Shown here one piece after another: positions 1-44,815 of a stretch of DNA of 64,000 bases (its first letter is position 1; every line of letters starts with the position of its first letter). The translations under genes were made by a program, and so were the position numbers. The stretch lies in the NCBI RefSeq assembly GCF_023055435.1, contig NW_025963857.1, forward strand, positions 23,498,001-23,562,000, in the 5' to 3' direction. Under the pieces are notes generated by a model. It saw only the letters and a program-made list of their open reading frames with translations. It was not told where the DNA came from and made no database searches. Origin of the DNA: Haliotis rufescens (taxonomy: Eukaryota).

Positions 1-2254
1 TCCAGTGATTAAAATCATTAGCATCGATCCACCCAATTGGGATCGATGACATGCATCAACCAAGTCAGCGAGCCTGACCACCCGATCCCGTTAGTCGCCT
101 TTTACGACAAGCATAGTCACCTTTTACGGCAAGCATGGGTTGCTGAAGACCTATATATTCTACCCCGGAATCCACTATCTGATAGTCATTCATACGCACA
201 TGCTTGTGATCATTATAGTCGGAATCGTACAATGGCCTCTGCTTCGAGCAGAGCTTTCGAATGATTCTGAAAAGGGTTTTGTGGCGTTTATTTGCAACTG
301 CGTTTCTTGAGAGAACTCTCTTATCTTCAACATATCATCTTGATAATTGTACACTTCATTATCAAGGAATTTGTGATTATACGAGCATCACTAAATTTGA
401 TATCTCAACTTTTATAGATAACGCCTGAATATTGATATAATAATCATTCAATGATGACCCTTTAACTACATAAATCGTCAACGACAGAGAATATTCAGGC
501 TCGATTATCTGTTGAAACAGATTTCATTGGGTGTAAAAGGCAAGATTGTGCTAAAATGTATACTGAATATCAGTGATGTCACCAGGTGTTAGTGAATAGT
601 TCATATTTGTTGGATGTTTCATGAGCTCCTCCGTCCGTTCCATCGTGTGCCAAATTGGGAGAATGTTGTCTTTTGACAATGTCTCAGCCATTCATACTTT
701 TGCATATATACTTAATCACTGTTGCAAATAACTCACGTTAACGTGTTTTAATCTTCGGCTGAGTCTTATGTCGTAAACATTAGAAGAAAGTATATAAATC
801 GTCTCTACCCTTTATGTATGCCCTTGACATGATGAAGCAGTAGTGATAGTGATGATTGTGTTCTTTTAAGTCGTGTTTAGACCAAAACTCTTACCAAGAA
901 TAAAACACGCGCAAATCAGTTTGACAATGTGTAACTATATAAGGGTTGCCCAGAAAAACCGTACATCTAAAAGTAAAGACGTGTGTTTTCAGAAGAAAAT
1001 GCTCTTAAAGTATAACACAAAGGTGTTTTCAAAGATAGACATGATCAAACGACTTGTTTTTACAGTCTGGTTGTTGTTATAAAGACTTATGACACGCTTT
1101 AAAGTTGGACCATTTATTCCGCTGAATTTCACTCTCTACAGTTACCAAATGCAATCTCCTTTGTATTGATAAATGATTGTCACTTCTGCTTTGTAATCAA
1201 ACAATAGGGATATATTAGCTATTTGTTTGTTCATTGTAATCTTCAATCCTACCAATCCAGTTCGGAATCTTCAAATTCGCGCTCTGATTTAATCAATATG
1301 TATTTTACAAATAGCGCCTACAGGGAAGGTGGTTAGTAAACACACAACTAAATATCTATATAGATATTTCTCCTATTAATTACATAAGCAGTATGCAAAA
1401 TGTTAAATTGCATCATCAAATCAAGAAGTACATGTTTGATGGAAATTACAAATAATTCGTAGTTTGATAAGCTATACCCGGACAAGCGTATTTAATAGAT
1501 ACTTTTGAATTCAATCGTTTTGTTTGTGTAATTGATAAACTGTAAAGATATGTTATTGTCATGGAAATTCCAACTGTATGCATTCCCTTCTAACCAAAGC
1601 AGTAAGAATCTTGCAACATTTGTTTTGATGCTCTACATCACTATGGCTTTCGGGTTTGTTTTATTGCAGCAGCTCAGATATTATTTATACAAAGCGCCAT
1701 AACAACATGTAGATTGTATTCTGAATACAACTTTCGCTCATTTTCAAGGACAGCGCACACATTTGCATTTCAATACAGTGCACACTGTCTACCCCTTGAT
1801 ACCGTCAATGACTGCTTTGACAAAAATTGACACGCCTGCTTATTTGTTTCGCTGCATGTTTTTAAAATGCAAATTGAAATACAGACAGCCAATTCCAGAT
1901 ATTATGGTACTTCAAATGGCCATCAAACCCTTTCCTGGCAGCCCAAATGATACATTCCCGTGAAACATGAACTCGGGTAAGTGACATTTGGTGGGAGATA
2001 TATCAAGCATAAAATCCCTCCTCTTATCATCATGTCCGGTTTCCTCAGGAACTTAATAGCACATTTCAGTAGTTGATATCTTAGCTAGCAGTAAAACGCA
2101 ATATCATTGAAGTGTGCTTGGATATTGGTCGACAACACGTACTATGTCCAGAGTTTACAATATGGAGAAACATAGATCACTCTTCCATTGTGAACATTCA
2201 ATTCAGATTAAGATTTTCAAACAAATTTCAAGGCGTAAATAAATATGACAAGAT

Positions 2255-2260
2255 TTTATT
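2255..2260 (-). terminator. Polyadenylation signal AATAAA of the Gly/Tyr gene (present in each copy)
   Basis: tttatt on the + strand ~65 nt past the stop codon, followed by T-rich sequence on the minus strand. Confidence 0.7.
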
Positions 2261-2325
2261 GAACCAATTCCATTGGTTTGAGAAAATACATAAATAGCCA
2301 GCATCACACTGCAGGTGATAATAAC

Positions 2326-2933
2326 TCAATAATAGCCGATACCTGAAACAAAAAAATAGTAGAATAAAGTTGGGATGTATGGATAAGTCACAACGAAGTC
2401 TTGAAACTAGCTGCGTGATAAACTATACCAAATATTAGAGAAAGCAGAGAATAGTTTTAAAGATGTTTTGTAAATGTCATCAGCTTTGTCGCTGAAAATA
2501 GTAATACCACATAGGTAAATTATGCAATTTTACAAACGAGACTGGAGGTATATTCAAGGATACGATAAACAAATGATATCATATTTTGTGAAATACCTTT
2601 TCCCAATCCAATTCCGTATCCTCCCATTCCGTAGAGACCACCATAGCCCCCGAGTCCTCCGTACAGACCTCCCATGCCGTATCCGTATTTGCCTCCGTAT
2701 AGACCTCCCATGCCTCCGTATATACCTCCCATGCCTCCGTATAGACCTCCCATGCCTCCGTATAGACCTCCATAGCCTCCAAGACCTCCAAGGCCTCCGT
2801 ACAATCCACCCATTCCGTAGCCAATTCCGCCCAGTCCTCCTTTCAACCCGCCAATTCCACCATACAGACCGGTAGGCTCGGCAAAGGCGGTAACAGCCAG
2901 GCAGGCAACAAGAGCGGCGACTATCTTCATCAT
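2326..2933 (-). CDS. Secreted Gly/Tyr-rich repeat protein, copy 1 (117 aa); coding exons 2933-2597 and 2342-2326
   Basis: Signal peptide MMKIVAALVACLAVTAFA followed by GGLY/GGMGGLY repeats. Donor AAAG|GTATTT and acceptor ttttttgtttcag|GT give ...GLGKGIGYY-stop. AATAAA lies on the minus strand at 2255-2260. Upstream acceptor ttactcaatag at 2943-2944. Confidence 0.9.
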
Positions 2934-3221
2934 TTTGAGTATCTATTGAGTAACGGGAAAATTATTGTCAAGAAAGGTAAAATAGCATGTTATCGTTACT
3001 CATCTGGTAAATTCAGTTCACACCACTCATTGTGAATTATGTTATCAGTTTTGCTTTCACCCGCATTCATATATTTCTCAATTTACAAGAACGTCTTATG
3101 TTACATATTCGGACTTTTATGAATTGGCTCAACATAAAGATTGAAAACAGCCTGATGCGCAGCAGATGAATCAAAAATTAAAAGTATACATATATATCAC
3201 AAGCAAAATTTAAATTAGTAC

Positions 3222-3309
3222 TTGCAGTTTGGTCTTTACTCGTATCTGTGTCTCAACGGCAGGTGAAGATAAGAGATGATGGAACAGTTTCCCCCGTCCT
3301 TTATATATA
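3222..3309 (-). promoter_or_regulatory. TATA box, initiator and short non-coding exon 1 of the Gly/Tyr gene (repeated in every intact unit)
   Basis: Minus-strand TATATAAA at 3300-3307, with Inr-like TCATCT ~30 nt downstream. Candidate donors are GTAAAG (3238-3239) or GTACTA (3220-3221), matched to the acceptor just above the ATG. Confidence 0.65.
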
Positions 3310-3582
3310 CCATTTGTGAATAATACGTGATTGATTTACCTTGGGCTGACCACTTCCAGGTAAGTAACGCACCTCAGCTTAATGGTGTAAAGTAAGCATT
3401 CTTTTCGCATCAAAGGGCCCGAGGTTATCACCCTACGGGTACACATGCGAGCTGGTATCCATGAACATCGATTAAGGAAGTACAAGACAACGTATATAAA
3501 GGTGGCAAACAGACACACTCTCTCTGGCATCGTCGAACTGCATTTCAAACAGTCCTCGATACTCAATGTTTAACCTATATTA

Positions 3583-4624: not shown

Positions 4625-6777
4625 CACTATCTGATAGTCATTCATACGCACATGCTTGTGATCATTATAGTCGGAATCGTACAATGGCCTCTGCTTCGAG
4701 CAGAGCTTTCGAATGATTCTGAAAAGGGTTTTGTGGCGTTTATTTGCAACTGCGTTTCTTGAGAGAACTCTCTTACCTTCAACATATCATCTTGGTAATT
4801 GTACACTTCATTATCAAGGAATTTGTGATAATACGAGCATCACTAAATTTGATATCTCAATTTTTATAGATAACGCCTGAATATTGATATAATAATCATT
4901 CAATGATGACCCTTTAACTACATAAATCGTCAACGACAGAGAATATTCAGGCTCGATTATCTGTTGAAACAGATTTCATTGGGTGTAAAAGGCAAGATTG
5001 TGCTAAAATGTATACTGAATATCAGTGATGTCACCAGGTGTTAGTGAATAGTTCATATTTGTTGGATGTTTCATGAGCTCCTCCGTCCGTTCCATCGTGT
5101 GCCAAATTGGGAGAATGTTGTCTTTTGACAATGTCTCAGCCATTCATACTTTTGCATATATACTTAATCACTGTTGCAAATAACTCACGTTAACGTGTTT
5201 TAATCTTCGGCTGAGTCTTATGTCGTAAACATTAGAAGAAAGTATATAAATCGTCTCTACCCTTTATGTATGCCCTTGACATGATGAAGCAGTAGTGATA
5301 GTGATGATTGTGTTCTTTTAAGTCGTGTTTAGACCAAAACTCTTACCAAGAATAAAACACGCGCAAATCAGTTTGACAATGTGTAACTATATAAGGGTTG
5401 CCCAGAAAAACCGTACATCTAAAAGTAAAGACGTGTGTTTTCAGAAGAAAATGCTCTTAAAGTATAACACAAAGGTGTTTTCAAAGATAGACATGATCAA
5501 ACGACTTGTTTTTACAGTCTGGTTGTTGTTATAAAGACTTATGACACGCTTTAAAGTTGGACCATTTATTCCGCTGAATTTCACTCTCTACAGTTACCAA
5601 ATGCAATCTCCTTTGTATTGATAAATGATTGTCACTTCTGCTTTGTAATCAAACAATAGGGATATATTAGCTATTTGTTTGTTCATTGTAATCTTCAATC
5701 CTACCAATCCAGTTCGGAATCTTCAAATTCGCGCTCTGATTTAATCAATATGTATTTTACAAATAGCGCCTACAGGGAAGGTGGTTAGTAAACACACAAC
5801 TAAATATCTATATAGATATTTCTCCTATTAATTACATAAGCAGTATGCAAAATGTTAAATTGCATCATCAAATCAAGAAGTACATGTTTGATGGAAATTA
5901 CAAATAATTCGTAGTTTGATAAGCTATACCCGGACAAGCGTATTTAATAGATATTTTTGAATTCAATCGTTTTGTTTGTGTAATTGATAAACTGTAAAGA
6001 TATGTTATTGTCATGGAAATTCCAACTGTATGCATTCCCTTCTAACCAAAGCAGTAAGAATCTTGCAACATTTGTTTTGATGCTCTACATCACTATGGCT
6101 TTCGGGTTTGTTTTATTGCAGCAGCTCAGATATTATTTATACAAAGCGCCATAACAACATGTAGATTGTATTCTGAATACAACTTTCGCTCATTTTCAAG
6201 GACAGCGCACACATTTGCATTTCAATACAGTGCACACTGTCTACCCCTTGATACCGTCAATGACTGCTTTGACAAAAATTGACACGCCTGCTTATTTGTT
6301 TCGCTGCATGTTTTTAAAATGCAAATTGAAATACAGACAGCCAATTCCAGATATTATGGTACTTCAAATGGCCATCAAACCCTTTCCTGGCAGCCCAAAT
6401 GATACATTCCCGTGAAACATGAACTCGGGTAAGTGACATTTGGTGGGAGATATATCAAGCATAAAATCCCTCCTCTTATCATCATGTCCGGTTTCCTCAG
6501 GAACTTAATAGCACATTTCAGTAGTTGATATCTTAGCTAGCAGTAAAACGCAATATCATTGAAGTGTGCTTGGATATTGGTCGACAACACGTACTATGTC
6601 CAGAGTTTACAATATGGAGAAACATAGATCACTCTTCCATTGTGAACATTCAATTCAGATTAAGATTTTCAAACAAATTTCAAGGCGTAAATAAATATGA
6701 CAAGATTTTATTGAACCAATTCCATTGGTTTGAGAAAATACATAAATAGCCAGCATCACACTGCAGGTGATAATAAC

Positions 6778-7394
6778 TCAATAATAGCCGATACCTGAAA
6801 CAAAAAAATAGTAGAATAAAGTTGGGATGTATGGATAAGTCACAACGAAGTCTTGAAACTAGCTGCATGATAAACTATACCAAATATTAGAGAAAGCAGA
6901 GAATAGTTTTAAAGATGTTTTGTAAATGTCATCAGCTTTGTCGCTGAAAATAGTAATACCACATAGGTAAATTATGCAATTTTACAAACGAGACTGGAGG
7001 TATATTTAAGGATACGATAAACAAATGATATCATATTTTGTGAAATACCTTTTCCCAATCCAATTCCGTATCCTCCCATTCCGTAGAGACCACCATAGCC
7101 CCCGAGTCCTCCGTACAGACCTCCCATGCCGTATCCGTATTTGCCTCCGTATAGACCTCCCATGCCTCCGTATATACCTCCCATGCCTCCGTATAGACCT
7201 CCCATGCCTCCGTATAGACCTCCATAGCCTCCAAGACCTCCAAGACCTCCAAGGCCTCCGTACAATCCACCCATTCCGTAGCCAATTCCGCCCAGTCCTC
7301 CTTTCAACCCGCCAATTCCACCATACAGACCGGTAGGCTCGGCAAAGGCGGTAACAGCCAGGCAGGCAACAAGAGCGGCGACTATCTTCATCAT
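6778..7394 (-). CDS. Secreted Gly/Tyr-rich protein, copy 2 (120 aa); coding exons 7394-7049 and 6794-6778
   Basis: Same structure as copy 1, with one extra 9-bp GGL unit. Confidence 0.9.
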
Positions 7395-10300
7395 TTTGAG
7401 TATCTATTGAGTAACGGGAAAATTATTGTCAAGAAAGGTAAAATAGCATGTTATCGTTACTCATCTGGTAAATTCAGTTCACACCACTCATTGTGAATTA
7501 TGTTATCAGTTTTGCTTTCACCCGCATTCATATATTTCTCAATTTACAAGAACGTCTTATGTTACATATTCGGACTTTTATGAATTGGCTCAATATAAAG
7601 ATTGAAAACAGCCTGATGCGCAGCAGATGAATCAAAAATTAAAAGTATACATATATATCACAAGCAAAATTTAAATTAGTACTTGCAGTTTGGTCTTTAC
7701 TCGTATCTGTGTCTCAACGGCAGGTGAAGATAAGAGATGATGGAACAGTTTCCCCCGTCCTTTATATATACCATTTGTGAATTATACGTGATTGATTTAC
7801 CTTGGGCTGGCCACTTCCAGGTAAGTAACGCACCTCAGCTTAATGGTGTAAAGTAAGCATTCTTTTCGCATCAAAGGGCCCGAGGTTATCACCCTACGGG
7901 TACACATGCGAGCTGGTATCCATGAACATCGATTAAGGAAGTACAAGACAACGTATATAAAGGTGGCAGACAGACACACTCTCTCTGGCATCGTCGAACT
8001 GCATTTCAAACAGTCCTCGATACTCAATGTTTAACCTATATTATTTAGGGGCGGTCGGGTAGCCTAGTGGTTAAAGCGTTCGCTCGTTACGCCGAAGACA
8101 CGGGTTCGATTTCCGACATGGGTACAATGTGTGTAGCCCATTGCTGGTGTCCCCCGCCGTGATATTGCTGGAATATTGCTAAAAGTGGCGTAAAACCATA
8201 CTCACTCACTCACTTTAACCTATATTAAGTAAATATTCGATAATGGTCTGAAAAGTGTGTATCCAGTAAATATATGATGTGGGAGCAACATACATCAGAC
8301 ATTATAATGCATCTGTGTGATACGACATAACATGAGACCAGAAAACTGATGCAACATACAAGTACAGCCTCGCCACAGTACAGCAGTAGCACTGTACCAC
8401 ACGAGGTCAACTATGCTAACCGTCTCCGTGTAATACAGCAGCCTGCTCACAAGAAAATAGCTTCTGCTGAATATACTGCAGAAGTCCCCAGATACTACAT
8501 TATTCTCCCCGAATTTTATTTATCTTACTGCACAATAACTATAAACTACAACAGCTTTATTTCCTAACTGAAAGGGACATATATTGGTTTCTTCTCACAA
8601 AGGGACTGTCACTATGAATACTCACAACACCTTTATATGTGTGTAGTATCTGTTAAAAGCCGAAAGTACACCAGTGTCTTCTGAAAACATGATTGACATA
8701 TGAACAACAGCTTGTTTTCTCGTCTTTGTTGACTTGTCTTTGTATGTGTTTGTGACGGTAGAACCGATGGGGCAGGATACGCTTACTTTTTGGCAACCGC
8801 CAGGTATCATCACTATCTGATTGGTTAGTTGGTTGGTTGGTTGTTTAACGCTGCACTCAGCAATATATTACTGCTATATGACGGCGGTCTGTAAATAATC
8901 GAGTCTGGACCAGACAATCCAGTGATTAAAATCATTAGCATCGATCCACCCAATTGGGATCGATGACATGCATCAACCAAGTCAGCGAGCCTGACCACCC
9001 GATCCCGTTAGTCGCCTTTTACGACAAGCATAGTCACCTTTTACGGCAAGCATGGGTTGCTGAAGACCTATTCTACCCCGGAATCCACTATCTGATAGTC
9101 ATTCATACGCACATGCTGTGATCATTATAGTCGGAATCGTACAATGGCCTCTGCTTCGAGCAGAGCTTTCGAATGATTCTGAAAAGGGTTTTGTGGCGTT
9201 TATTTGCAACTGCGTTTCTTGAGAGAACTCTCTTACCTTCAACATATCATCTTGGTAATTGTACACTTCATTATCAAGGAATTTGTGATAATACGAGCAT
9301 CACTAAATTTGATATCTCAATTTTTATAGATAACGCCTGAATATTGATATAATAATCATTCAATGATGACCCTTTAACTACATAAATCGTCAACGACAGA
9401 GAATATTCAGGCTCGATTATCTGTTGAAACAGATTTCATTGGGTGTAAAAGGCAAGATTGTGCTAAAATGTATACTGAATATCAGTGATGTCACCAGTTG
9501 TTAGTGAATAGTTCATATTTGTTGGATGTTTCATGAGCTCCTCCGTCCGTTCCATCGTGTGCCAAATTGGGAGAATGTTGTCTTTTGACAATGTCTCAGC
9601 CATTCATACTTTTGCATATATACTTAATCACTGTTGCAAATAACTCACGTTAACGTGTTTTAATCTTCGGCTGAGTCTTATGTCGTAAACATTAGAAGAA
9701 AGTATATAAATCGTCTCTACCCTTTACGTATGCCCTTGACATGATGAAGCAGTAGTGATAGTGATGATTGTGTTCTTTTAAGTCGTGTTTAGACCAAAAC
9801 TCTTACCAAGAATAAAACACGCGCAAATCAGTTTGACAATGTGTAACTATATAAGGGTTGCCCAGAAAAACCGTACATCTAAAAGTAAAGACGTGTGTTT
9901 TCAGAAGAAAATGCTCTTAAAGTATAACACAAAGGTGTTTTCAAAGATAGACATGATCAAACGACTTGTTTTTACAGTCTGGTTGTTGTTATAAAGACTT
10001 ATGACACGCTTTAAAGATGGACCATTTATTCCGCTGAATTTCACTCTCTACAGTTACCAAATGCAATCTCCTTTGTATTGATAAATGATTGTCACTTCTG
10101 CTTTGTAATCAAACAATAGGGATATATTAGCTATTTGTTTGTTCATTGTAATCTTCAATCCTACCAATCCAGTTCGGAATCTTCAAATTCGCGCTCCGAT
10201 TTAATCAATATGTATTTTACAAATAGCGCCTACAGGGAAGGTGGTTAGTAAACACACAACTAAATATCTATATAGATATTTCTCCTATTAATTACATAAG

Positions 10301-11237
10301 CAGTATGCAAAATGTTAAATTGCATCATCAAATCAAGAAGTACATGTTTGATGGAAATTACAAATAATTCGTAGTTTGATAAGCTATACCCGGACAAGCG
10401 TATTTAATAGATATTTTTGAATTCAATCGTTTTGTTTGTGTAATTGATAAACTGTAAAGATATGTTATTGTCATGGAAATTCCAACTGTATGCATTCCCT
10501 TCTAACCAAAGCAGTAAGAATCTTGCAACATTTGTTTTGATGCTCTACATCACTATGGCTTTCGGGTTTGTTTTATTGCAGCAGCTCAGATATTATTTAT
10601 ACAAAGCGCCATAACAACATGTAGATTGTATTCTGAATACAACTTTCGCTCATTTTCAAGGACAGCGCACACATTTGCATTTCAATACAGTGCACACTGT
10701 CTACCCCTTGATACCGTCAATGACTGCTTTGACAAAAATTGACACGCCTGCTTATTTGTTTCGCTGCATGTTTTTAAAATGCAAATTGAAATACAGACAG
10801 CCAATTCCAGATATTATGGTACTTCAAATGGCCATCAAACCCTTTCCTGGCAGCCCAAATGATACATTCCCGTGAAACATGAACTCGGGTAAGTGACATT
10901 TGGTGGGAGATATATCAAGCATAAAATCCCTCCTCTTATCATCATGTCCGGTTTCCTCAGGAACTTAATAGCACATTTCAGTAGTTGATATCTTAGCTAG
11001 CAGTAAAACGCAATATCATTGAAGTGTGCTTGGATATTGGTCGACAACACGTACTATGTCCAGAGTTTACAATATGGAGAAACATAGATCACTCTTCCAT
11101 TGTGAACATTCAATTCAGATTAAGATTTTCAAACAAATTTCAAGGCGTAAATAAATATGACAAGATTTTATTGAACCAATTCCATTGGTTTGAGAAAATA
11201 CATAAATAGCCAGCATCACACTGCAGGTGATAATAAC

Positions 11238-31288: not shown

Positions 31289-31349
31289 AATTGAAGACAC
31301 AAGAGACATGATTGAGTGGGACACTGGTTTCAGCACTAATGCATGTTTT

Positions 31350-32983: not shown

Positions 32984-35167
32984 TGTTGGGCAGGCTTGGG
33001 TTGTTAACACATGCGTGGCGAGATAGTTTTGTTATTGCAAATAGTTTTACAGATTTTAACCAAAAACAACATTAAACTCAGTTTCCGAGAAACATCGTTT
33101 TCACGGCATTGTTTTCCTGTAATGCTCAGCTGTAAGTAGGTACTTTCTCAATTAGTCAGCTGTACAGATCATGAGATAAGTAGCACTTTTCTCAGAGCGA
33201 TATTACGTACGACCGTCTCCTTCGACGATCAACTATTATCACAAAGGGACTGTCACTATGAATACTCACAACACCTTTTTATGTGTGTAGTATCTGTTAA
33301 AAGCCGAAAGTACACCAATGTCTTCTGAAAACATGATTGACATAGATTGCTCACAAGAAAATAGCTTCTGCTGAATATACTGCAGAAGTCCCCAGATACT
33401 ACATTATTCTCTCCGAATTTTATTTATCTTACTGCACAATAACTATATTTCCTAACTGAAAGGGACATATATTGGTTTCTTCTCACAAAGGGACTGTCGC
33501 TATGAATACTCACAACACCTTTATATGTGTGTAGTATCTGTTAAAAGCCGAAAGAACACCAGTGTCTTCTGAAAACATGATTGACATATGAACAACAGCT
33601 TGTTTTCTCGTCTTTGTTGACTTGTCTTTGTATGCGTTTGTGACGGTAGAACCGATGGGGCAGGATACGCTTACTTTTTGGCAACCGCCAGGTATCATCA
33701 CTATCTGATTGGTTAGTTGGTTGGTTGGTTGTTAAACGCCGCACTCAGCAATATATTACTGCTATGTGACGGCGGTCTGTAAATAATCGAGTCTGGACCA
33801 GACAATCCAGTGATTAAAATCATTAGCATCGATCCACCCAATTGGGATCGATGACATGCATCAACAAAGTCAGCGAGCCTGACCACCCGATCCCGTTAGT
33901 CGCCTTTTACGACAAGCATAGTCACCTTTTACGGCAAGCATGGGTTGCTGAAGACCTATTCTACCCCGGAATCCACTCTCTGATAGTCATTCATACGCAC
34001 ATGCTGTGATCATTATAGTCGGAATCGTACAATGGCCTTTGCTTCGAGCAGAGCTTTCGAATGATTCTGAAAAGGGTTTTGTGGCGTTTATTTGCAACTG
34101 CGTTTCTTGAGAGAACTCTCTTATCTTCAACATATCATCTTGATAATTGTACACTTCATTATCAAGGAATTTGTGATAATACGAGCATCACTAAATTTGA
34201 TATCTCAATTTCTATAGATAACGCCTGAATATTGATATAATAATCATTCAATGATGACCCTTTAACTACATAAATCGTCAACGCCAGAGAATATTCAGGC
34301 TCGATTATCTGTTGAAACAGATTTCATTGGGTGTAAAAGGCAAGATTGTGCTAAAATGTATACTGAATATCAGTGATGTCACCAGGTGTTAGTGAATAGT
34401 TCATATTTGTTGGATGTTTCATGAGCTCCTCCGTCCGTTCCATCGTGTGCCAAATTGGGAGAATGTTGTCTTTTGACAATGTCTCAGCCATTCATACTTT
34501 GGCATATATACTTAATCACTGTTGCAAATAACTCACGTTAACGTGTTTTAATCTTCGGCTGAGTCTTAGGTCGTAAACATTAGAAGAAAGTATATAAATC
34601 GTCTCTACCCTTTACGTATGCCCTTGACATGATGAAGCAGTAGTGATAGTGATTATTGTGTTCTTTTAAGGCGTGTTTAGACCAAAACTCTTACCAAGAA
34701 TAAAACACGCGCAAATCAGTTTGACAATGTGTAACTATATAAGGTTTGCCCAGAAAAACCGTACATCTAAAAGTAAAGACGTGTGTTTTCAGAAGAAAAT
34801 GCTCTTAAAGTATAACACAAAGGTGTTTTCAAAGATAGACATGATCAAACGACTTGTTTTTACAGTCTGGTTGTTGTTATAAAGACTTATGACAAGCTTT
34901 AAAGTTGAACCATTTATTCCGCTGAATTTCACTCTCTACAGTTACCAAATGCAATCTCCTTTGTATTGATAAATGACTGTCACTTCTGCTTTTTAATCAA
35001 ACAATAGGGATATATTAGCTATTTGTTTGTTCATTGTAATCTTCAATCCTACCAATCCAGTTCGGAATCTTCAAATTCGCGCTCTGATTTAATCAATATG
35101 TATTTTACAAATAGCGCCTACAGGGAAGGTGGTTAGTAAACACACAACTAAATATCTATATAGATAC

Positions 35168-35483: not shown

Positions 35484-36283
35484 GTGTAATTGATAAACTG
35501 TAAAGATATGTTATTGTCATGGAAATTCCAACTGTATGCATTCCCTTCTAACCAAAGCAGTAAGAATCTTGCAACATTTGTTTTGATGCTCTACATCACT
35601 ATGGCAGTCGGGTTTGTTTTATTGCAGCAGCTCAGATATTATTTATACAAAGCGCCATAACAACATGTAGATTGTATTCTGAATACAACTTTCGCTCATT
35701 TTCAAGGACAGCGCACACATTTGCATTTCAATACAGTGCACACTGTCTACCCCTTGATACCGTCAATGACTGCTTTGACAAAAATTGACACGCCTGCTTA
35801 TTTGTTTCGCTGCATGTTTTTAAAATGCAAATTGAAATACAGACAGCCAATTCCAGATATTATGGTACTTCAAATGGCCATCAAACCCTTTCCTGGCAGC
35901 CCAAATGATACATTCCCGTGAAACATGAACTCGGGTAAGTGACATTTGGTGGGAGATATATCAAGCATAAAATCCCTCCTCTTATCATCATGTCCGGTTT
36001 CCTCAGGAACTTAATAGCACATTTCAGTAGTTGATATCTTAGCTAGCAGTAAAACGCAATATCATTGAAGTGTGCTTGGATATTGGTCGACAACACGTAC
36101 TATGTCCAGAGTTTACAATATGGAGAAACATAGATCACTCTTCCATTGTGAACATTCAATTCAGATTAAGATTTTCAAACAAATTTCAAGGCGTAAATAA
36201 ATATGACAAGATTTTATTGAACCAATTCCATTGGTTTGAGAAAATACATAAATAGCCAGCATCACACTGCAGGTGATAATAAC

Positions 36284-36876
36284 TCAATAATAGCCGATAC
36301 CTGAAACAAACAAATAGTAGAATAAAGTTGGGATGTATGGATAAGTCACAACGAAGTCTTGAAACTAGCTGCATGATAAACTATACCAAATATTAGAGAA
36401 AGCAGAGAATAGTTTTAAAGATGTTTTGTAAATGTCATCAGCTTTGTCGCGGAAAATAGTAATACCACATAGGTAAATTATGCAATTTTGCAAACGAGAC
36501 TGGAGGTATATTTACGGATACGATAAACAAATGATATCATATTTTGTGAAATACCTTTTCCCAATCCAATTCCGTATCCTCCCATTCCGTAGAGACCACC
36601 ATAGCTCCCGAGTCCTCCGTGCAGACCTCCCATGCCTCCGTATAGACCTCCCATGCCTCCGTATAGACCTCCCATGCCTCCGTATAGACCTCCCATGCCT
36701 CCGTATAGACCTCCATAGCCTCCAAGACCTCCAAGGCCTCCGTACAATCCACCCATTCCGTAGCCAATTCCGCCCAGTCCTCCTTTCAACCCGCCAATTC
36801 CACCATACAGACCGGTAGGCTCGGCAAAGGCGGTAACAGCCAGGCAGGCAACAAGAGCGGCGACTATCTTCATCAT
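36284..36876 (-). CDS. Secreted Gly/Tyr-rich protein, copy 7 (112 aa variant); coding exons 36876-36555 and 36300-36284
   Basis: In frame. Lacks the KYGY module and has GGLHGGLGSY in place of GGLYGGLGGY. Confidence 0.9.
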
Positions 36877-39800
36877 TTTGAGTATCTATTGAGTAACGGG
36901 AAAATCATTGTCAAGAAAGGTAAAATAGCATGTTATCGTTACTCATCTGGTAAATTCAGTTCACACCACTCATTGTGAATTATGTTATCAGTTTTACTTT
37001 CACCCGCATTCATATATTTCCCAATTTACAAGAACGTCTTATGTTACATATTCGTACTTTTATAAATTGGCTCAACATGAAGATTGAAAACAGACAGATG
37101 CGCAGCAGATGAATCAAAAATTAAAAGTATACATATATATCACAAGCAAACCTCAAAATAGTACTTGCAGTTTGGTCTTTACTCGTATCTGTGTCTCAAC
37201 GGTAGGTGAAGATAAGAGATGATGGAACAATTTCCCCCGTACTTTATATATACCATTTGTGAATTATACGTGATTGATTTACCTTGGGCTGGCCACTTCC
37301 AGGTAAGTAACGCACCTCAGCTTAATGGTGTAAAGTAAGCATTCCTTTCGCATCAAAGGGCCCGAGGTTATCACCCTACGGGTACACATGCGAGCTGGTA
37401 TTCATGAACATCGATAAAGGAAGTACAAGACAACGTATATAAAGGTGGCAAACAGACACACTCTCTCTGGCATCGTCGAACTGCATTTCAAACAGTCCTC
37501 GATACTCAATGTTTAACCTATATTATTTAGGGGCGGTCGGGTAGCCTAGTGGTTAAAGCGTTCGCTCGTTACGCCGAAGACACGGGTTCGATTTCCGACA
37601 TGGGTACAATGTGTGAAGCCCATTGCTGGTGTCCCCCGCCGTGATATTGCTGGAATATTGCTAAAAGCGGCGTAAAACCATACTCACTCACTCACTTTAA
37701 CCTATATTAAGTAAATATTCGATAATGGTCTGAAAAGTGTGTATCCAGTGAATATATCATGTGGGAGCAACATACATCAGACATTATAATGCATCGTTGT
37801 GATACGACATAACATGAGACCAGAAAACTGATGCAACACACCAGTACAGCCTCGCCACAGTACAGCAGTAGCACTGTACAACACGGGTCCGTTTCCGTGT
37901 AATACAGCAGCCTGCTCACAAGAAAATAGCTTCTGCTGAATATACTGCAGAAGTCCCCAGATACTACATTATTCTCCCCGAATTTTATTTATCTTACTGC
38001 ACAATAACTATAAACTACAACAGCTTTATTTCCTAACTGAAAGGGACATATATTGGTTTCTTCTCACAAAGGGACTGTCACTATGAATACTTTCAACAAC
38101 TTTTTATGTGTGTAGTATCTGTTAAAAGCCGAAAGTACACCAATGTCTTCTGAAAACATGATTGACATATGAACAACAGCTTGTTTTCTCGTCTTTGTTG
38201 ACTTGTCTTTGTATGTGTTTGTGACGGTGGAACCGATGGGGCAGGATACGCTTACTTTATGGCAACCGCCAGTTATCATCACTATCTGGTTGGTTAGTTG
38301 GTTAGTTGGTTGTTTAACGCCGCACTCAGCAATATTCCAGCTATATGACGGCGGTCTGTAAATAATCGAGTCTGGACCAGACAATCCAGTGATTAAAATC
38401 ATTAGCATCGATCCACGCAATTGGCATCGATGACATGCATCAACAAAGTCAGCGAGCCTGACCACCCGATCCCGTTAGTCGCCTTTTACGACAAGCATAG
38501 TCACCTTTTACGGCAAGCATGGGTTGCTGAAGACCTATTCTACCCCGGAATCCACTATCTGATAGTCATTCATACGCACATGCTTGTGATCATTATAGTC
38601 GGAATCGTACAATGGCCTTTGCTTCGAGCAGAGCTTTCGAATGATTCTGAAAAGGGTTTTGTGGCGTTTATTTGCAACTGCGTTTCTTGAGAGAACTCTC
38701 TTATCTTCAACATATCATCTTGATAATTGTACACTTCATTATCAAGGAATTTGTGATAATACGAGCATCACTAAATTTGATATCTCAATTTTTATAGATA
38801 ACGCCTGAATATTGATATAATAATCATTCAATGATGACCCTTTAACTACATAAATCGTCAACGCCAGAGAATATTCAGGCTCGATTATCTGTTGAAACAG
38901 ATTTCATTGGGTGTAAAAGGCAAGATTGTGCTAAAATGTATACTGAATATCAGTGATGTCACCAGGTGTTAGTGAATAGTTCATATTTGTTGGATGTTTC
39001 ATGAGCTCCTCCGTCCGTTCCATCGTGTGCCAAATTGGGAGAATGTTGTCTTTTGACAATGTCTCAGCCATTCATACTTTGGCATATATACTTAATCACT
39101 GTTGCAAATAACTCACGTTAACGTGTTTTAATCTTCGGCTGAGTCTTAGGTCGTAAACATTAGAAGAAAGTATATAAATCGTCTCTACCCTTTACGTATG
39201 CCCTTGACATGATGAAGCAGTAGTGATAGTGATTATTGTGTTCTTTTAAGGCGTGTTTAGACCAAAACTCTTACCAAGAATAAAACACGCGCAAATCAGT
39301 TTGACAATGTGTAACTATATAAGGTTTGCCCAGAAAAACCGTACATCTAAAAGTAAAGACGTGTGTTTTCAGAAGAAAATGCTCTTAAAGTATAACACAA
39401 AGGTGTTTTCAAAGATAGACATGATCAAACGACTTGTTTTTACAGTCTGGTTGTTGTTATAAAGACTTATGACAAGCTTTAAAGTTGAACCATTTATTCC
39501 GCTGAATTTCACTCTCTACAGTTACCAAATGCAATCTCCTTTGTATTGATAAATGATTGTCACTTCTGCTTTGTAATCAAACAATAGGGATATATTAGCT
39601 ATTTGTTTGTTCATTGTAATCTTCAATCCTACCAATCCAGTTCGGAATCTTCAAATTCGCGCTCTGATTTAATCAATATGTATTTTACAAATAGCGCCTA
39701 CAGGGAAGGTGGTTAGTAAACACACAACTAAATATCTATATAGATACTTCTCCTATTAATTACAGCATGCAAAATGTTAAATTGCATCATCAAATCAAGA

Positions 39801-40856
39801 AGTACATGTTTGATGGAAATTACAAATAATTCGTAGTTTGATAAGCTATACCCGGACAAGCGTATTTAATAGTTACTTTTGAATTCAATCGTTTTGTTTT
39901 CTCCTTTTAATTACATAAGCAGTATGCAAAATGTTAAATTGCATAATCAAATCAAGAAGTACGTGTTTGATGGAAATTACAAATAATTCGTAGTTTGATA
40001 AGCTATACCCGGACAAGCGTATTTAATAGTTACTTTTGAATTCAATCGTTTTGTTTGTGTAATTGATAAACTGTAAAGATATGTTATTGTCATGGAAATT
40101 CCAACTGTATGCATTCCCTTCTAACCAAAACAGTAAGCATCTTGCAACATTTGTTTTGATGCTCTACATCACTATGGCTTTCGGGTTTGTTTTATTGCAG
40201 CAGCTCAGATATTATTTATACAAAGCGCCATAACAACATGTAGATTGTATTCTGAATACAACTTTCGCTCATTTTCAAGGACAGCGCACACATTTGCATT
40301 TCAATACAGTGCACACTGTCTACCCCTTGATACCGTCAATGACTGCTTTGACAAAAATTGACACGCCTGCTTATTTGTTTCGCTGCATGTTTTTAAAATG
40401 CAAATTGAAATACAGACAGCCAATTCCAGATATTATGGTACTTCAAATGGCCATCAAACCCTTTCCTGGCAGCCCAAATGATACATTCCCGTGAAACATG
40501 AACTCGGGTAAGTGACATTTGGTGGGAGATATATCAAGCATAAAATCCCTCCTCTTATCATCATGTCCGGTTTCCTCAGGAACTTAATAGCACATTTCAG
40601 TAGTTGATATCTTAGCTAGCAGTAAAACGCAATATCATTGAAGTGTGCTTGGATATTGGTCGACAACACGTACTATGTCCAGAGTTTACAATATGGAGAA
40701 ACATAGATCACTCTTCCATTGTGAACATTCAATTCAGATTAAGATTTTCAAACAAATTTCAAGGCGTAAATAAATATGACAAGATTTTATTGAACCAATT
40801 CCATTGGTTTGAGAAAATACATAAATAGCCAGCATCACACTGCAGGTGATAATAAC

Positions 40857-41443
40857 TCAATAATAGCCGATACCTGAAACAAAAAAATAGTAGAATAAAG
40901 TTGGGATGTATGGATAAGTCACAACGAAGTCTTGAAACTAGCTGCATGATAAACTATACCAAATATTAGAGAAAGCAGAGAATAGTTTTAAAGATGTTTT
41001 GTAAATGTCATCAGCTTTGTCGCGGAAAATAGTAATACCACATAGGTAAATTATGCAATTTTGCAAACGAGACTGGAGGTATATTTACGGATACGATAAA
41101 CAAATGATATCATATTTTGTGAAATACCTTTTCCCAATCCAATTCCGTATCCTCCCACTCCGTAGAGACCACCATAGCCCCCGAGTCCTCCGTACAGACC
41201 TCCCATGCCGTATCCGTATTTGCCTCCGTATAGACCTCCCATGCCTCCGTATAGACCTCCCATGCCTCCGTATAGACCTCCAAGGCCTCCAAGACCTCCA
41301 AGGCCTCCGTACAATCCACCCATTCCGTAGCCAATTCCGCCCAGTCCTCCTTTCAACCCGCCAATTCCACCATACAGACCGGTAGGCTCGGCAAAGGCGG
41401 TAACAGCCAGGCAGGCAACAAGAGCGGCGACTATCTTCATCAT
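40857..41443 (-). CDS. Secreted Gly/Tyr-rich protein, copy 8 (110 aa variant); coding exons 41443-41128 and 40873-40857
   Basis: In frame. Has fewer heptad repeats and an M>V change near the C-terminus. Confidence 0.9.
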
Positions 41444-44400
41444 TTTGAGTATCTATTGAGTAACGGGAAAATCATTGTCAAGAAAGGTAAATAGCATGTT
41501 ATCGTTACTCATCTGGTAAATTCAGTTCACACCACTCATTGTGAATTATGTTATCAGTTTTGCTTTCACCCGCATTCATATATTTCTCAATTTACAAGAA
41601 CGTTTTATGTTACATATTCGGACTTTTATGAATTGGCTCAACATAAAGATTGAAAACAGACAGATGCGCAGCAGATGAATCAAAAATTAAAAGTATACAT
41701 ATATATCAAAAGCAAAATTTAAATTAGTACTTGCAGTTTGGTCTTTACTCGTATCTGTGTCTCAACGGCAGGTGAAGATAAGAGATGATGGAACAATTTC
41801 CCCCGTCCTTTATATATACCATTTGTGAATTATACGTGATTGATTTACCTTGGGCTGGCCACTTCCAGGTAAGTAACGCAGCTCAGCTTAATGGTGTAAA
41901 GTAAGCATTCCTTTCGCATCAAAGGGCCCGAGGTTATCACCCTACGGGTACACATGCGAGCTGGTATTCATGAACATCGATTAAGGAAGTACAAGACAAT
42001 GTATATAAAGGTGGCAAACAGACACACTCTCTCTGGCATCGTCTAACTGCATTTCAAACAGTCCTCGATACTCAATGTTTAACCTATATTATTTAGGGGC
42101 GGTCGGGTAGCCTAGTGGTTAAAGCGTTCGCTCGTTACGCCGAAGACACGGGTTCGATTTCCGACATGGGTACAATGTGTGTAGCCCATTGCTGGTGTCC
42201 CCCGCCGTGATATTGCTGGAATATTGCTAAAAGCGGCGTAAAACCATACTCACTCACTCACTTTAACCTATATTAAGTAAATATTCGATAATGGTCTGAA
42301 AAGTGTGTATCCAGTGAATATATCATGTGGGAGCAACATACATCAGACATTATAATGCATCGTTGTGATACGACATAACATGAGACCAGAAAACTGATGC
42401 AACACACCAGTACAGCCTCGCCACAGTACAGCAGTAGCACTGTATCACACGGGGTCCGTTTCCGTGTAATACAGCAGCCTGCTCACAAGAAAATAGCTTC
42501 TGCTGAATATACTGCAGAAGTCCCCAGATACTACATTATTCTCCCCGAATTTTATTTATCTTACTGCACAATAACTATAAACTACAACAGCTTTATTTCC
42601 TAACTGAAAGGGACATATATTGGTTTCTTCTCACAAAGGGACTGTCACTATGAATAGTCACAACACCTTTTTATGTGTGTAGTATCTGTTAAAAGCCGAA
42701 AGTACACCAATGTCTTCTGCAAACATGATTGACATATGAACAACAGCTTGTTTTCTCGTCTTTGTTGACTTGTCTTTGTATGTGTTTGTGACGGTGGAAC
42801 CGATGGGGCAGGATACGCTTACTTTATGGCAACCGCCAGGTATCATCACTATCTGGTTGGTTAGTTGGTTGGTTGGTTGTTTAACGCCGCACTCAGCAAT
42901 ATTCCAGCTATATGACGGCGGTCTGTAAATAATCGAGTCTGGACCAGACAATCCAGTGATTAAAATCATTAGCATCGATCCACGCAATTGGCATCGATGA
43001 CATGCATCAACCAAGTCAGCGAGCCTGACCACCCGATCCCGTTAGTCGCCTTTTACGACAAGCATAGTCACCTTTTACGGCAAGCATGGGTTGCTGAAGA
43101 CCTATTCTACCCCGGAATCCACTATCTGATAGTCATTCATACGCACATGCTTGTGATCATTATAGTCGGAATCGTACAATGGCCTCTGCTTCGAGCAGAG
43201 CTTTCGAATGATTCTGAAAAGGGTTTTGTGGCGTTTATTTGCAACAGTTACTGCGTTTCTTGAGAGAACTCTCTTATCTTCAACATATCATCTTGATAAT
43301 TGTACACTTCATTATCAAGGAATTTGTGATAATACGAGCATCACTAAATTTGATATCTCAATTTTTATAGATAACGCCTGAATATTGATATAATAATCAT
43401 TCAATGATGACCCTTTAACTATATAAATCGTCAACGCCAGAGAATATTCAGGCTCGATTATCTGTTGAAACAGATTTCATTGGGTGTAAAAGGCAAGATT
43501 GTGCTAAAATGTATACTGAATATCAGTGATGTCACCAGGTGTTAGTGAATAGTTCATATTTGTTGGATGTTTCATGAGCTCCTCCGTCCGTTCCATCGTG
43601 TGCCAAATTGGGAGAATGTTGTCTTTTGACAATGTCTCAGCCATTCATACTTTTGCATATATACTTAATCACTGTTGCAAATAACTCACTTTAACGTGTT
43701 TTCATCTTCGGCTGAGTCTTAGGTCGTAAACATTAGAAGAAAGTATATAAATCGTCTCTACCCTTTACGTATGCCCTTGACATGATGAAGCAGTAGTGAT
43801 AGTGATGATTGTGTTCTTTTAAGGCGTGTTTAGACCAAAACTCTTACCAAGAATAAAACACGCGCAAATCAGTTTAACAATGTGTAACTATATAAGGTTT
43901 GCCCAGAAAAACCGTACATCTAAAAGTAAAGACGTGTGTTTTCAGAAGAAATTGCTCTTAAAGTATAACACAAAGGTGTTTTCAAAGATAGACATGATCA
44001 AACGACTTGTTTTTACAGTCTGGTTGTTGTTATAAAGACTTATGACAAGCTTTAAAGTTGGACCATTTATTCCGCTGAATTTCACTCTCTACAGTTACCA
44101 AATGCAATCTCCTTTGTATTGATAAAAATGATTCTGAACAGTATCATCAAACTTGACTGAAGCAAACTTTTTTTTCCGATTATATTGGGTTATCTGTTTG
44201 TGACATCTTGAACAATAGTGAATGAGTGGGTGAGTTTGGTTTGATGCCGCTTTAAACAGTATTCCAGTTATGTCAAGGCGTGTCAGTTTAATTCAGGAGG
44301 AAAGCCGAGGTGAAACGCGTGAGCTCGGGTATGACGCCGACAAACCTAGAAACATAATCAGTATGAACCGATCCTAAACAATAGGAGACGTCATATTGCA

Positions 44401-44579: not shown

Positions 44580-44815
44580 GGCCCGTGAAGATCCGGGGTA
44601 GAATAGGTCTTCAAAAACCCATGCTTGGCGTAAAAGGCGACTAACGGGATTGGGTGGTCAGGCTCGCTGACTTGGTTGATGCATGTCGTCGTATCCCAAT
44701 TGCGTGGATCGATGCTCACGATGTCAATCACTTGATTGTCTGGTCCACACTCGATTAATTACAGACCACCGTCATACAGCTGAAATATTGCCGAGTGTGG
44801 CGTTAGGCAAAAAAA
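44580..44815 (+). mobile_element. SINE family B copy with complete head
   Basis: Reverse-complement match to 4361-4624; starts cccgtgaagatccggggtagaatagg. Confidence 0.85.

What the first reader, a model, noticed from the sequence alone, without database searches (positions are those of the whole stretch)
1..44133. Freshly amplified battery of at least 8 genes for a small secreted Gly/Tyr/Met heptad protein
Seen: every intact unit keeps the signal peptide, both coding splice sites, stop and AATAAA. Copies 2-6 encode identical 120-aa proteins. The mature 102 aa are 55 Gly and 16 Tyr, with no Cys and only one acidic residue, and are built from a 21-bp GGMGGLY repeat. Established: GGY/GGLY-rich secreted proteins make sclerotised or self-assembling biomaterials (shematrins, prisilkin, suckerin amorphous modules, chorion proteins). 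Similar Gly-rich sequences also act as antimicrobial peptides (acanthoscurrin/ctenidin type). Inference: this is dosage amplification of a bulk-secreted structural or defence protein, cross-linkable via Tyr (DOPA/dityrosine). I cannot assign it to a named family. Low-complexity masking and repeat collapse would hide it from standard annotation.
Basis: partly seen in the sequence, partly recalled or inferred. Interest (0 to 1): 0.85.

Follow-up and report, generated by a model that had tools for sequence, protein, structure and literature searches.

The report
Abalone glycine-tyrosine secreted protein gene array
The window holds the last 8 of 39 tandem copies, out of about 124 genome-wide, of an abalone-only gene for a tiny secreted, disordered glycine/tyrosine-rich protein that is spliced as predicted and reaches enormous RNA levels in some samples, most likely raw material for a cross-linked shell-related coating.

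Summary
There are eight intact three-exon genes on the minus strand, and copies 2-6 encode identical 120-aa proteins. The mature 102 aa hold 55 Gly and 16 Tyr and are built on a 21-bp GGMGGLY repeat.

The window holds only the right end of a roughly 199-kb array of 39 copies. The same signal-peptide 38-mer occurs 92 times in this genome, 50 of them on another contig. Two sister types with the same gene structure add 22 and 9 copies.

Public run contigs show both introns spliced out. Exon depth is 1e5-1e6, against 1e2-1e3 in introns and 20-60 in flanks, in two organisms from separate studies. Two other runs, one from the same study, are near background.

Relatives exist only in Haliotis, as unstudied RefSeq predictions. 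I found no paper describing the family.

The protein has no Pfam domain and is predicted disordered. It is best read as a dosage-amplified precursor of a structural, tyrosine-cross-linkable material, analogous to Has-tsfgr1, the Lymnaea glycine-rich candidates and the shematrins. The producing tissue is unknown because sample names were coded. Copy number was not checked by DNA read depth.

The scan had already noted the same array 122 kb upstream (s1-806691).

It is a new member of a known kind.

The parts
1..44126 (-). Right-hand 44 kb of a tandem array of 4.46-kb units. The whole array is G000:C79:23343087-23542126, about 199 kb, with 39 gene copies.
   Evidence: Searches give unit homology and its end at 44126. 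One search gives the 39 starts on C79. One search gives the left end in L022.
2255..3311 (-). Gene copy 1, from the TATA box to AATAAA. CDS is 2597-2933 plus 2325-2342, encoding 117 aa.
6707..7772 (-). Gene copy 2, the reference model. TATA lies within the 21-nt match at 7752-7772. Exon 1 (5'UTR) runs from about 7740 to 7687. Intron 1 is 7404-7686 (GC..AG). Exon 2 is 7049-7403, with ATG at 7394. Intron 2 is 6795-7048. The last exon starts at 6794, with the stop at 6777-6779 and AATAAA at 6707-6712. It encodes 120 aa.
   Evidence: Splice joints 6790>7045 and 7403>7687, and the depth steps at both gene ends, come.
11167..12232 (-). Gene copy 3, 120 aa. Its TATA box variant reads TATACAAA.
15626..16691 (-). 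Gene copy 4, 120 aa.
20085..21150 (-). Gene copy 5, 120 aa.
24543..25608 (-). Gene copy 6, 120 aa.
27692..33347 (-). LINE retrotransposon interrupting the array. About 2.6 kb of unit, including one whole gene, is missing across it.
   Evidence: One search lists the ORFs. One search finds RVT_1 plus Exo_endo_phos in the 945-aa ORF at 28697-31534. One search shows unit homology stopping at 27691 and resuming at 33348 out of register.
36213..37254 (-). Gene copy 7, 112 aa, in a diverged unit about 97.5% identical.
40786..41820 (-). Gene copy 8, 110 aa, the last gene of the array.
41444..44126 (-). Terminal partial unit. It holds the promoter, 5'UTR exon and first intron of copy 8 (to about 41820) and the spacer beyond, but no further gene. 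This is the array's edge.

Best explanation
**What it is (shown).** This is the end of one of three large tandem arrays of a gene family found only in abalone (Haliotis). Each 4.46-kb unit carries one TATA-driven, three-exon gene. The product is an 18-residue signal peptide followed by a roughly 9.4-kDa, mildly basic, cysteine-free, intrinsically disordered chain of GGMGGLY-type heptads ending in ..GKGIGYY.

**How the array behaves (inferred).** The many near-identical copies are kept uniform by unequal crossing-over or gene conversion. Their purpose is output: the combined transcripts reach extreme abundance in particular samples and are almost absent in others.

**Most likely function (inferred).**
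- The protein is a bulk-secreted precursor of an insoluble structural material made by shell-forming mantle epithelium, either the periostracum or the outer organic shell framework.
- After secretion, the regularly spaced Tyr/Leu/Met side chains between glycine spacers drive self-association.
- The Gly-flanked tyrosines are then cross-linked by secreted peroxidase or tyrosinase into a sclerotised sheet.

**Status of each step.** Shown: gene structure, copy number in the assembly, splicing, very high and sample-specific RNA, restriction to Haliotis, and predicted disorder. Inferred: secretion (from the signal peptide), structural role, tissue, and cross-linking chemistry.
For: **Gene model and conservation.** Eight of eight copies are intact.

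**Copy number in the assembly.** Type A has 92 copies: 39 on C79, 50 on C24 and 3 strays. The 38-nt signal-peptide coding stretch is identical in 90 of the 92. Sister types number 22 (+1) and 9. They share the signal peptide, the phase-1 intron after GKG(I) and a mini last exon ending in GYY.

**Expression.**
- In runs X1 and X3, two organisms from two studies, summed contig depth is 1e5-1.3e6 on exons, 4e2-4e3 in introns and 20-60 beyond the TATA box and poly(A) site.
- Joints remove exactly the predicted 254-nt intron (GT..AG on the gene strand) and a 283-nt 5'UTR intron.
- Runs X2 (same study as X1) and X9 show only depth 2-14, without exon enrichment.
- About 2,000 distinct contigs at 90-100% identity were laid in X1, so many variants are expressed.

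**No fold.** Pfam finds nothing. AlphaFold gives pLDDT below 50 for residues 17-115, with only the signal-peptide helix.

**Composition.** Gly is 54%, Tyr 16%, and 14 of 16 Tyr are followed by Gly.

**Analogues from the literature.**
- H. asinina Has-tsfgr1 is a 114-aa signal peptide plus Gly/Leu/Tyr repeat protein ending in Tyr. It is expressed at the larval shell-field edge and the anterior outer mantle fold (PMC2034539).
- Lymnaea secreted basic Gly/Tyr-rich proteins are expressed next to the peroxidase zone. They are proposed peroxidase substrates for the periostracum and were missed by proteomics (PMC6007483).
- Pinctada shematrins are tandemly arranged, and the authors suggest copy number may raise transcript output (PMC4759782).
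- Peroxidase and tyrosinase are abundant in the H. laevigata shell matrix (PMC6003135).
Against: - The tissue or stage of the high-expression samples is unknown, because names were coded. Nothing here ties the gene to the mantle.
- No peptide or sequence of the family appears in the H. laevigata shell-proteome supplements. The family is also not among the 14 proteins of the bleached H. asinina shell. That fits a periostracal, cross-linked or trypsin-poor protein, but equally fits a non-shell product.
- Coding exons are not clearly more conserved than introns between copies or arrays. Selection on the repeat sequence is therefore not demonstrated. Only the promoter, 5'UTR, signal peptide and tail stand out.
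- Copy number rests on the assembly alone. Some units differ by 0-5 nt per 3.3 kb.
Confidence: 0.58

Rival explanations
1. It is the same kind of bulk structural protein, but for a different secreted material. Candidates are the radular teeth or membrane, the jaws, the egg coat, the larval operculum, or the pedal adhesive and mucus.
For: The evidence for a bulk, self-associating, cross-linkable secreted protein says nothing about tissue. The family is absent from both abalone shell proteome studies examined. Language-model neighbours are arthropod cuticle-type glycine-rich clusters, but the score of 0.76 is weak and is a lead only.
Against: The only characterised abalone and gastropod analogues with this build are expressed in shell-forming mantle. 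There is no positive evidence for any other tissue.
Confidence: 0.24
2. It is a glycine-rich antimicrobial or defence peptide of the ctenidin, acanthoscurrin or nematode NLP/CNC type, amplified for rapid mass production.
For: The protein is small, cationic, Gly/Tyr-rich and secreted. RefSeq's automatic names for relatives include 'ctenidin-1-like' and 'neuropeptide-like protein 31'. Expression is strongly sample-specific, which could reflect induction.
Against: - An exhaustive HMMER search finds no arthropod or nematode AMP relative. All true hits are Haliotis, so the names reflect composition only.
- Net charge is only about +2 (3 Lys, 1 Glu) at pI 8.8.
- There are no dibasic processing sites (read directly from the sequence).
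- About 124 gene copies and RNA depth up to 1e6 fit a stoichiometric building material better than an effector.
Confidence: 0.08
3. The copy number is partly an assembly artefact, an over-expanded or mis-resolved near-identical repeat. True dosage would then be much lower than 39 or 92. This is not exclusive of the readings above.
For: In the 10-unit block, units differ by only 0-5 nt per 3.3 kb, and two non-adjacent units are identical. No DNA read depth was examined.
Against: - Window units differ by 9-31 substitutions each, with identity falling steadily with distance.
- Blocks of distinct repeat-length variants and three transposon insertions give the array internal landmarks.
- A 9-nt length variant found in other copies of the array also appears in an independent run.
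- About 2,000 variant RNA contigs were laid in X1.
- H. asinina has at least 13 separately annotated copies.
Confidence: 0.1

Closest known systems
[quoted passage not shown] 2007, PMC2034539)
   Same: Same genus. It is about 114 aa with a 17-residue signal peptide. The mature part is more than 52% Gly with Leu and Tyr in short repeats, and it ends in Tyr. It is the only characterised abalone protein of this build, and it is expressed at the shell-field edge and outer mantle fold.
   Different: Its repeat is given as GGYGLGL and its tail as GYKGY, against GGMGGLY and KGIGYY here. A tandem GGYGLGL pattern has no match in this genome. No tandem array was described for it.
Uncharacterised RefSeq predictions in other abalone: H. 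asinina 'glycine-rich protein-like' / 'neuropeptide-like protein 31' (XP_067657837-49), H. cracherodii 'shematrin-like protein 2' / 'spidroin-1-like', H. rubra 'ctenidin-1-like'
   Same: These are true homologues. They share the signal peptide, the N-terminal EPTGLYG or KP.GYG start, GGLYGG-based repeats and the GLGKGIG..YY tail. They are multi-copy in H. asinina.
   Different: They are automatic names only, with no study found. Some models fuse two or three neighbouring genes (P0003 at 346 aa, P0011 at 979 aa). The copy number seen here, 39 + 50 + 3 of one type, is far above what those records show.
Shematrins and KRMPs of pearl oysters (Pinctada)
   Same: They are lineage-restricted, secreted, glycine-rich repetitive proteins ending in Tyr. 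They are very highly expressed in the mantle and tandemly duplicated, and they evolve by repeat slippage.
   Different: There is no detectable sequence homology. They are larger proteins, and only five shematrin genes on two scaffolds are reported as tandem. From my own knowledge, shematrin tails carry a basic cluster before the final Tyr. Here the tail is KGIGYY.
Lymnaea stagnalis glycine-rich shell-forming candidates Lstag-sfc-6/7/8 (Herlitze et al. 2018, PMC6007483)
   Same: They are secreted, basic, low-complexity Gly/Tyr/Leu-rich proteins with Tyr flanked by Gly. They are proposed peroxidase substrates in periostracum formation and were not detectable by shell proteomics.
   Different: No homology was detected. 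They are also Asn-rich, and no large arrays are reported.
Suckerin Gly-rich modules (squid sucker ring teeth)
   Same: The GGLYGG motif occurs in the suckerin amorphous modules (papers found). They form a cross-link-free or Tyr-rich structural biopolymer.
   Different: From my own knowledge, suckerins alternate Gly-rich modules with Ala/His-rich beta-sheet modules. The mature protein here has no Ala and no His. There is no homology.

Membership tests
Haliotis GGLY-repeat secreted protein family (unnamed; RefSeq 'glycine-rich protein-like' etc.) | Shared signal peptide MMK(I/V)..LVACLAV..(F/Y)A followed by (E/K)P | tested here: met
   The alignment A1 of types A, B and C with the H. asinina and H. 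rubra proteins has invariant M1 M2 K3 L8 V9 C11 L12 A13 V14 A18 P20.
Haliotis GGLY-repeat secreted protein family (unnamed; RefSeq 'glycine-rich protein-like' etc.) | Same gene structure: 5'UTR exon, one large coding exon, a phase-1 intron after GKG(I), and a mini last exon ending GYY-stop | tested here: met
   Seen in type A, type C and type B.
Haliotis GGLY-repeat secreted protein family (unnamed; RefSeq 'glycine-rich protein-like' etc.) | Significant sequence similarity beyond composition | tested here: met
   phmmer against 1.84 billion representatives gives E = 7.5e-29, 7.4e-17 and 5.2e-12 to the three Haliotis clusters. The next hits are at E = 3e-6 or worse and are unrelated low-complexity proteins.
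Shematrin family (Pinctada) | Sequence homology to shematrins | tested here: not met
   No bivalve shematrin appears among the hits at E <= 1e-3 in the exhaustive search. The RefSeq name 'shematrin-like' is automatic.
Shematrin family (Pinctada) | Glycine-rich repetitive secreted protein whose C-terminal motif ends in Tyr | tested here: met
   Gly is 54%, and the tail is KGIGYY. The feature is as described in PMC2034539.
Shematrin family (Pinctada) | Mantle-edge expression and presence in the prismatic layer | not testable with these tools
   Sample names of the expressing runs are coded. The family was not found in the abalone shell proteome data examined.
Has-tsfgr1-type protein | GGYGLGL repeats and a GYKGY C-terminus | tested here: not met
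   The repeat here is GGMGGLY and the tail KGIGYY. A back-translated tandem GGYGLGL pattern has no match in this genome. This is a weak test, because it crosses species and requires an exact pattern.
Ctenidin/acanthoscurrin glycine-rich antimicrobial peptides | Homology to the spider peptides | tested here: not met
   No arthropod AMP appears among the significant hits.
Ctenidin/acanthoscurrin glycine-rich antimicrobial peptides | Antimicrobial activity; haemocyte expression | not testable with these tools
   This needs an assay and labelled expression data.
Suckerins | Alternating Ala/His-rich beta-sheet modules and Gly-rich modules | tested here: not met
   The mature protein contains no Ala and no His. 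It is predicted fully disordered.

The most novel reading that the evidence does not exclude
The roughly 124-gene, abalone-only family would be the main protein precursor of a tyrosine-cross-linked scleroprotein layer of the abalone shell, a gastropod 'periostracin'. It would have been missed by shell proteomics because it is insoluble, trypsin-poor and low in complexity. That would make it the largest tandem amplification of a mollusc shell-forming gene yet seen. The GGMGGLY heptad would be a new minimal self-assembling, coacervating module for protein materials.
Probability: 0.33. Interest if true: 0.65.

Novelty: new member of a known kind. Interest (0 to 1): 0.5.

Why it matters
Lineage-specific, repetitive, glycine-rich secreted proteins in tandem clusters are a known theme of mollusc shell formation. 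Known clusters, however, have a handful of genes. Here one small gene is present about 90 times nearly unchanged, plus about 30 sister genes, and it yields one of the most abundant RNAs in some samples.

If it is the substrate of the peroxidase or tyrosinase tanning system, it would identify the long-elusive bulk protein of a gastropod periostracum or outer shell framework. It would also explain why proteomics misses that protein, and it would offer a very simple 9-kDa sequence for biomimetic materials.

The arrays are also a clean natural case for studying concerted evolution and dosage amplification, and a warning for annotation. Models in other abalone genomes fuse neighbouring copies and carry misleading names such as spidroin, ctenidin and neuropeptide-like.

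Tried and rejected
**Searches that gave nothing.**
- Rfam on one whole unit gave no match, and ARAGORN found no tRNA in the window. The SINE-like pieces in the spacer are therefore not recognisable RNA genes.
- No other ORF of note lies in the unit. The only other ORFs of 70 aa or more are two short spacer ORFs (76 and 72 aa) and two out-of-frame or antisense readings of the repeat.
- Pfam gave nothing for the protein.
- The ESM Atlas gave only weak scores of 0.76 to arthropod cuticle-type glycine-rich clusters, which I treat as a lead only.
- The bacterial promoter and terminator scan is irrelevant for an animal gene and was ignored.
- The fold prediction is disordered, so no fold search was run.

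**Literature.**
- The family motifs MGGLYGG, GLYGGMGG and YGGMGGLY occur in no paper. GGLYGG occurs mainly in squid suckerin and derived tandem-repeat protein papers, plus a few unrelated ones.
- Searches pairing abalone or Haliotis with 'ctenidin', 'acanthoscurrin', 'shematrin-like' and 'glycine-rich cell wall structural' found no abalone study of these genes.
- The 2026 H. iris genome paper does not mention them.
- The two silk-like H. asinina proteins of McDougall et al. are different genes.
- The H. laevigata proteome supplements hold none of the family's motifs.

**Has-tsfgr1.** The motif pattern has no match in this genome.

The rest of the C79 array and the C24 and C1 arrays were therefore studied only through search coordinates and 27 sample loci.
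- Reads were laid on RNA-type runs, so DNA depth was not tested.

**Handling of the spliced model.** The joined two-exon coding sequence was never sent to any search tool. All searches used the large coding exon by reference. The join was made only inside scripts, to count residues and compare copies.

Full report
**1. What is in the window**

Tandem Repeats Finder reports the same 21-bp repeat at regular intervals of about 4,460 bp. The repeat finder and BLAST show direct repeats of 4,458-4,461 bp from window position 1 to 44126.

Read on the minus strand, each unit holds one gene:
- a TATA box;
- a short 5'UTR exon and an intron;
- a 346-nt coding stretch starting ATGATGAAG;
- a 254-nt intron;
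- a mini last exon encoding ..IGYY and the stop, with AATAAA 82 nt after the acceptor of that last exon.

A script located eight such genes, with ATG at 2933, 7394, 11854, 16313, 20772 and 25230, then 36876 and 41443. All have an open frame, both coding splice sites, the stop and the poly(A) signal. All eight also keep the TATA box and the donor of the first intron, with one TATA variant in copy 3.

Copies 2-6 encode identical 120-aa proteins. Copies 1, 7 and 8 differ by in-frame repeat indels and a few substitutions, giving 117, 112 and 110 aa.

After an 18-residue signal-type leader (MMK, a hydrophobic core, then AFA|E), the 102 mature residues are G55 Y16 L14 M6 I5 K3 E1 P1 T1. Mass is 9.4 kDa and pI 8.8, and 14 of 16 Tyr are followed by Gly. 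The commonest heptads are GMGGLYG and MGGLYGG.

**2. The array is far larger than the window shows**

The window is G000:C79:23498001-23562000 of a 1.33-Gb, 615-contig assembly. A search of the whole genome with the large coding exon gave 136 matches, which is a lower bound.

An exact count with the 38-nt start of the coding region gave 92 sites, 90 of them without a single mismatch:
- 39 on C79 between 23,344,231 and 23,539,406, in blocks of 14, 10, 13 and 2;
- 50 on C24, in blocks of 11, 28 and 11 with a period of about 4.0 kb;
- single copies on C190, C423 and C589.

The left edge of the C79 array lies at about 23,343,087 and the right edge at window 44126. The window therefore holds the last 8 of 39 copies of a roughly 199-kb array.

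The three breaks between blocks are insertions rather than unrelated genes:
- In the window, a LINE with an intact 945-aa endonuclease plus reverse-transcriptase ORF lies at 27692-33347. About 2.6 kb of unit, including one gene, is lost across it.
- One upstream break is a clean insertion of about 11 kb at a single point of the unit.
- The other upstream break contains a reverse-transcriptase ORF.

**3. A family of three types**

Other matches in the genome are sister genes.
- Type C has the leader MMKVIALVACLAVAAFA, GGYGMGGLY repeats and a tail ending GIGYGYY. It has 22 copies at a period of about 3.9 kb on C1, plus one on C57.
- Type B has the leader MMKIIVVLVACLAVATYA, GGMGGLY repeats and a tail ending GMGYGYY. 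It has 9 copies as head-to-head pairs on C190.

All three types share the leader, the large coding exon, a phase-1 intron just after GKG(I), the mini last exon ending GYY-stop, and AATAAA. Counted by gene starts, the family has about 124 members.

**4. Age and maintenance**

Window units 2-6 differ by 9-31 substitutions per 4.46 kb (99.3-99.8% identity). Identity falls steadily with distance along the array. Unit 8 is 98.2-98.3% identical to units 2-6.

In the 10-copy block upstream, units differ by 0-5 nt per 3.3 kb.

Between the C79 and C24 arrays, introns differ by about 6.5% and the coding exon by about 5%. The promoter-proximal 100 nt, the 5'UTR exon, the signal-peptide region and the last exon differ by 0-2%. 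Within C79, variable sites are no rarer in the coding exon (4.3%) than in the introns (3.9-7.1%).

These data show very recent duplication or homogenisation. They do not show purifying selection on the repeat itself.

H. asinina also has a run of at least 13 consecutively numbered gene models of type A, several with identical proteins. Old arrays kept uniform by unequal crossing-over fit at least as well as a single 'fresh' burst.

**5. It is expressed, spliced as predicted, and at extreme level**

Public runs holding the gene were found, and four were laid on window 6500-8000.

In X1 (organism A) and X3 (organism B, another study), summed contig depth is:
- 1.2e5-1.3e6 across exon 2 and 1.2e5-2.7e5 across the last exon;
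- 4e2-4e3 in both introns;
- 20-60 downstream of the poly(A) site and upstream of the TATA box.

Contig joints skip exactly 254 nt (6790>7045, CT..AC on the plus strand, which is GT..AG for the gene) and 283 nt (7403>7687, a GC..AG intron in the 5'UTR). Loose ends at 7403 carry the exon-1 sequence.

These runs are not on record as RNA. Even so, a thousand-fold exon-to-intron contrast with precise joints can only come from spliced transcripts.

X2 (same study as X1) and X9 have depth 2-14 with no exon enrichment. Expression is therefore strongly sample-specific.

About 2,000 contigs at 90-100% identity were laid in X1. A 9-nt repeat-length variant seen in other copies of the array also appears in X2. 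Many variants therefore exist outside this assembly.

The limits are these:
- Depths are summed over paralogues.
- Contigs cannot rank genes.
- Sample names are coded, so the tissue or stage is unknown.

**6. Relatives and literature**

The protein has no Pfam domain. AlphaFold with a family alignment predicts only the signal-peptide helix, with pLDDT below 50 from residue 17 on.

The word-indexed search and the exhaustive HMMER search of 1.84 billion representatives agree. The only true relatives are Haliotis proteins, namely:
- H. asinina 'glycine-rich protein-like' and 'neuropeptide-like protein 31';
- H. cracherodii 'shematrin-like protein 2' and 'spidroin-1-like', which are models fusing two or more type-C genes;
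- H. rubra 'ctenidin-1-like', which is type B.

These names are automatic and reflect composition only. No paper in the searchable library contains the family's motifs or discusses these genes.

The nearest characterised proteins are analogues:
- Has-tsfgr1 of H. asinina is 114 aa with Gly/Leu/Tyr repeats and a Tyr terminus. It is expressed at the shell-field edge and outer mantle fold and is down-regulated in large animals.
- The Lymnaea Gly/Tyr-rich candidates are expressed beside the peroxidase zone. They are proposed as peroxidase substrates for the periostracum and are invisible to proteomics.
- The Pinctada shematrins are Gly-rich, end in Tyr and are very highly expressed in the mantle. 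Five genes are in tandem, and the authors suggest copy number may raise transcript output.

The family is absent from the H. laevigata shell-proteome supplements and from the 14 proteins of bleached H. asinina shell.

**7. Interpretation**

The secure part is as follows. This is an abalone-restricted, massively amplified, actively and selectively transcribed gene for a small secreted disordered Gly/Tyr/Leu/Met repeat protein. Such a copy number and RNA level point to a stoichiometric product, a building material, rather than a signalling or catalytic one.

The inferred part is the location and the chemistry. By analogy with Has-tsfgr1, the Lymnaea candidates and the shematrins, the shell-forming mantle edge is the most likely source. 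Peroxidase and tyrosinase are abundant in abalone shell matrix. The protein would then be laid down as periostracum or outer organic framework and tanned through its Gly-flanked tyrosines.

Three rivals remain:
- the same kind of material made elsewhere, such as radula, jaw, egg coat or adhesive;
- a glycine-rich antimicrobial peptide, which is weakly supported, since there is no homology, low charge, no processing sites and an implausible dosage;
- partial inflation of copy number by the assembler, which the internal landmarks and independent variants argue against but which DNA depth has not tested.

**8. Verdict**

This is a new and unusually large member of a known kind, the tandemly amplified, lineage-specific, low-complexity secreted proteins of mollusc biomaterials. 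It is not a new kind of system.

The same array was already flagged by the scan 122 kb upstream (s1-806691).

- The joined coding sequence was used only inside scripts for counting. It was never sent to a search tool.

Noticed in passing
window 27692-33347 (minus strand): A LINE with an uninterrupted 945-aa ORF (Exo_endo_phos + RVT_1, 28697-31534) and an upstream 383-aa ORF. It sits where one array unit, gene included, is missing. The flanking unit pieces are out of register by about 2.6 kb, and there is a further 415-bp deletion at 26914.
   Followed up: partly
window 8048-8212 and 8840-9082 in every unit; also 44621-44805, 47183-47424, 52586-52749, 53538-53720: Two SINE-like elements are embedded in each unit's spacer and recur outside the array at 88-93% identity. 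One has a GTGAGTGAGTGAG head. Rfam gave no match over one whole unit, and ARAGORN found no tRNA gene in the window.
   Followed up: partly
window 7404-7686 and the same place in all 8 copies: The 5'UTR intron of type A genes uses a GC-AG donor (..AAACT|GCAAGT), confirmed by contig joints. The sister type C gene has a standard GT donor at that intron.
   Followed up: yes
window 35168-35483 and 39763-40056: A 157-158-bp segment of the spacer is duplicated in tandem in units 7 and 8 only. This marks them as a separate sub-lineage of the array.
   Followed up: no
G000:C190:6878917-6905760 (loci L014-L016): The type B sister genes are arranged as head-to-head pairs, four on the plus strand and five on the minus strand. 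Some copies carry odd substitutions (for example GRMEG) or degenerate neighbours (a 62-aa remnant at L015:7152-7337).
   Followed up: partly
G000:C79:23403690-23414653 (loci L023, L024): An insertion of about 11 kb splits one array unit at a single point, unit position 1482/1484, without loss of unit sequence. It has no ORF of 250 aa or more and no similarity to the window's LINE.
   Followed up: partly
window 48096-55672: Another first-stage note places an nAChR-like subunit gene just right of the array. I did not examine it.
   Followed up: no
same genome, another piece (note s1-814383): The scan lists a separate tandem array of at least 13 genes for a secreted Gly/Lys/His polypeptide in this genome. 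Amplified low-complexity secreted genes may be a recurrent feature here.
   Followed up: no
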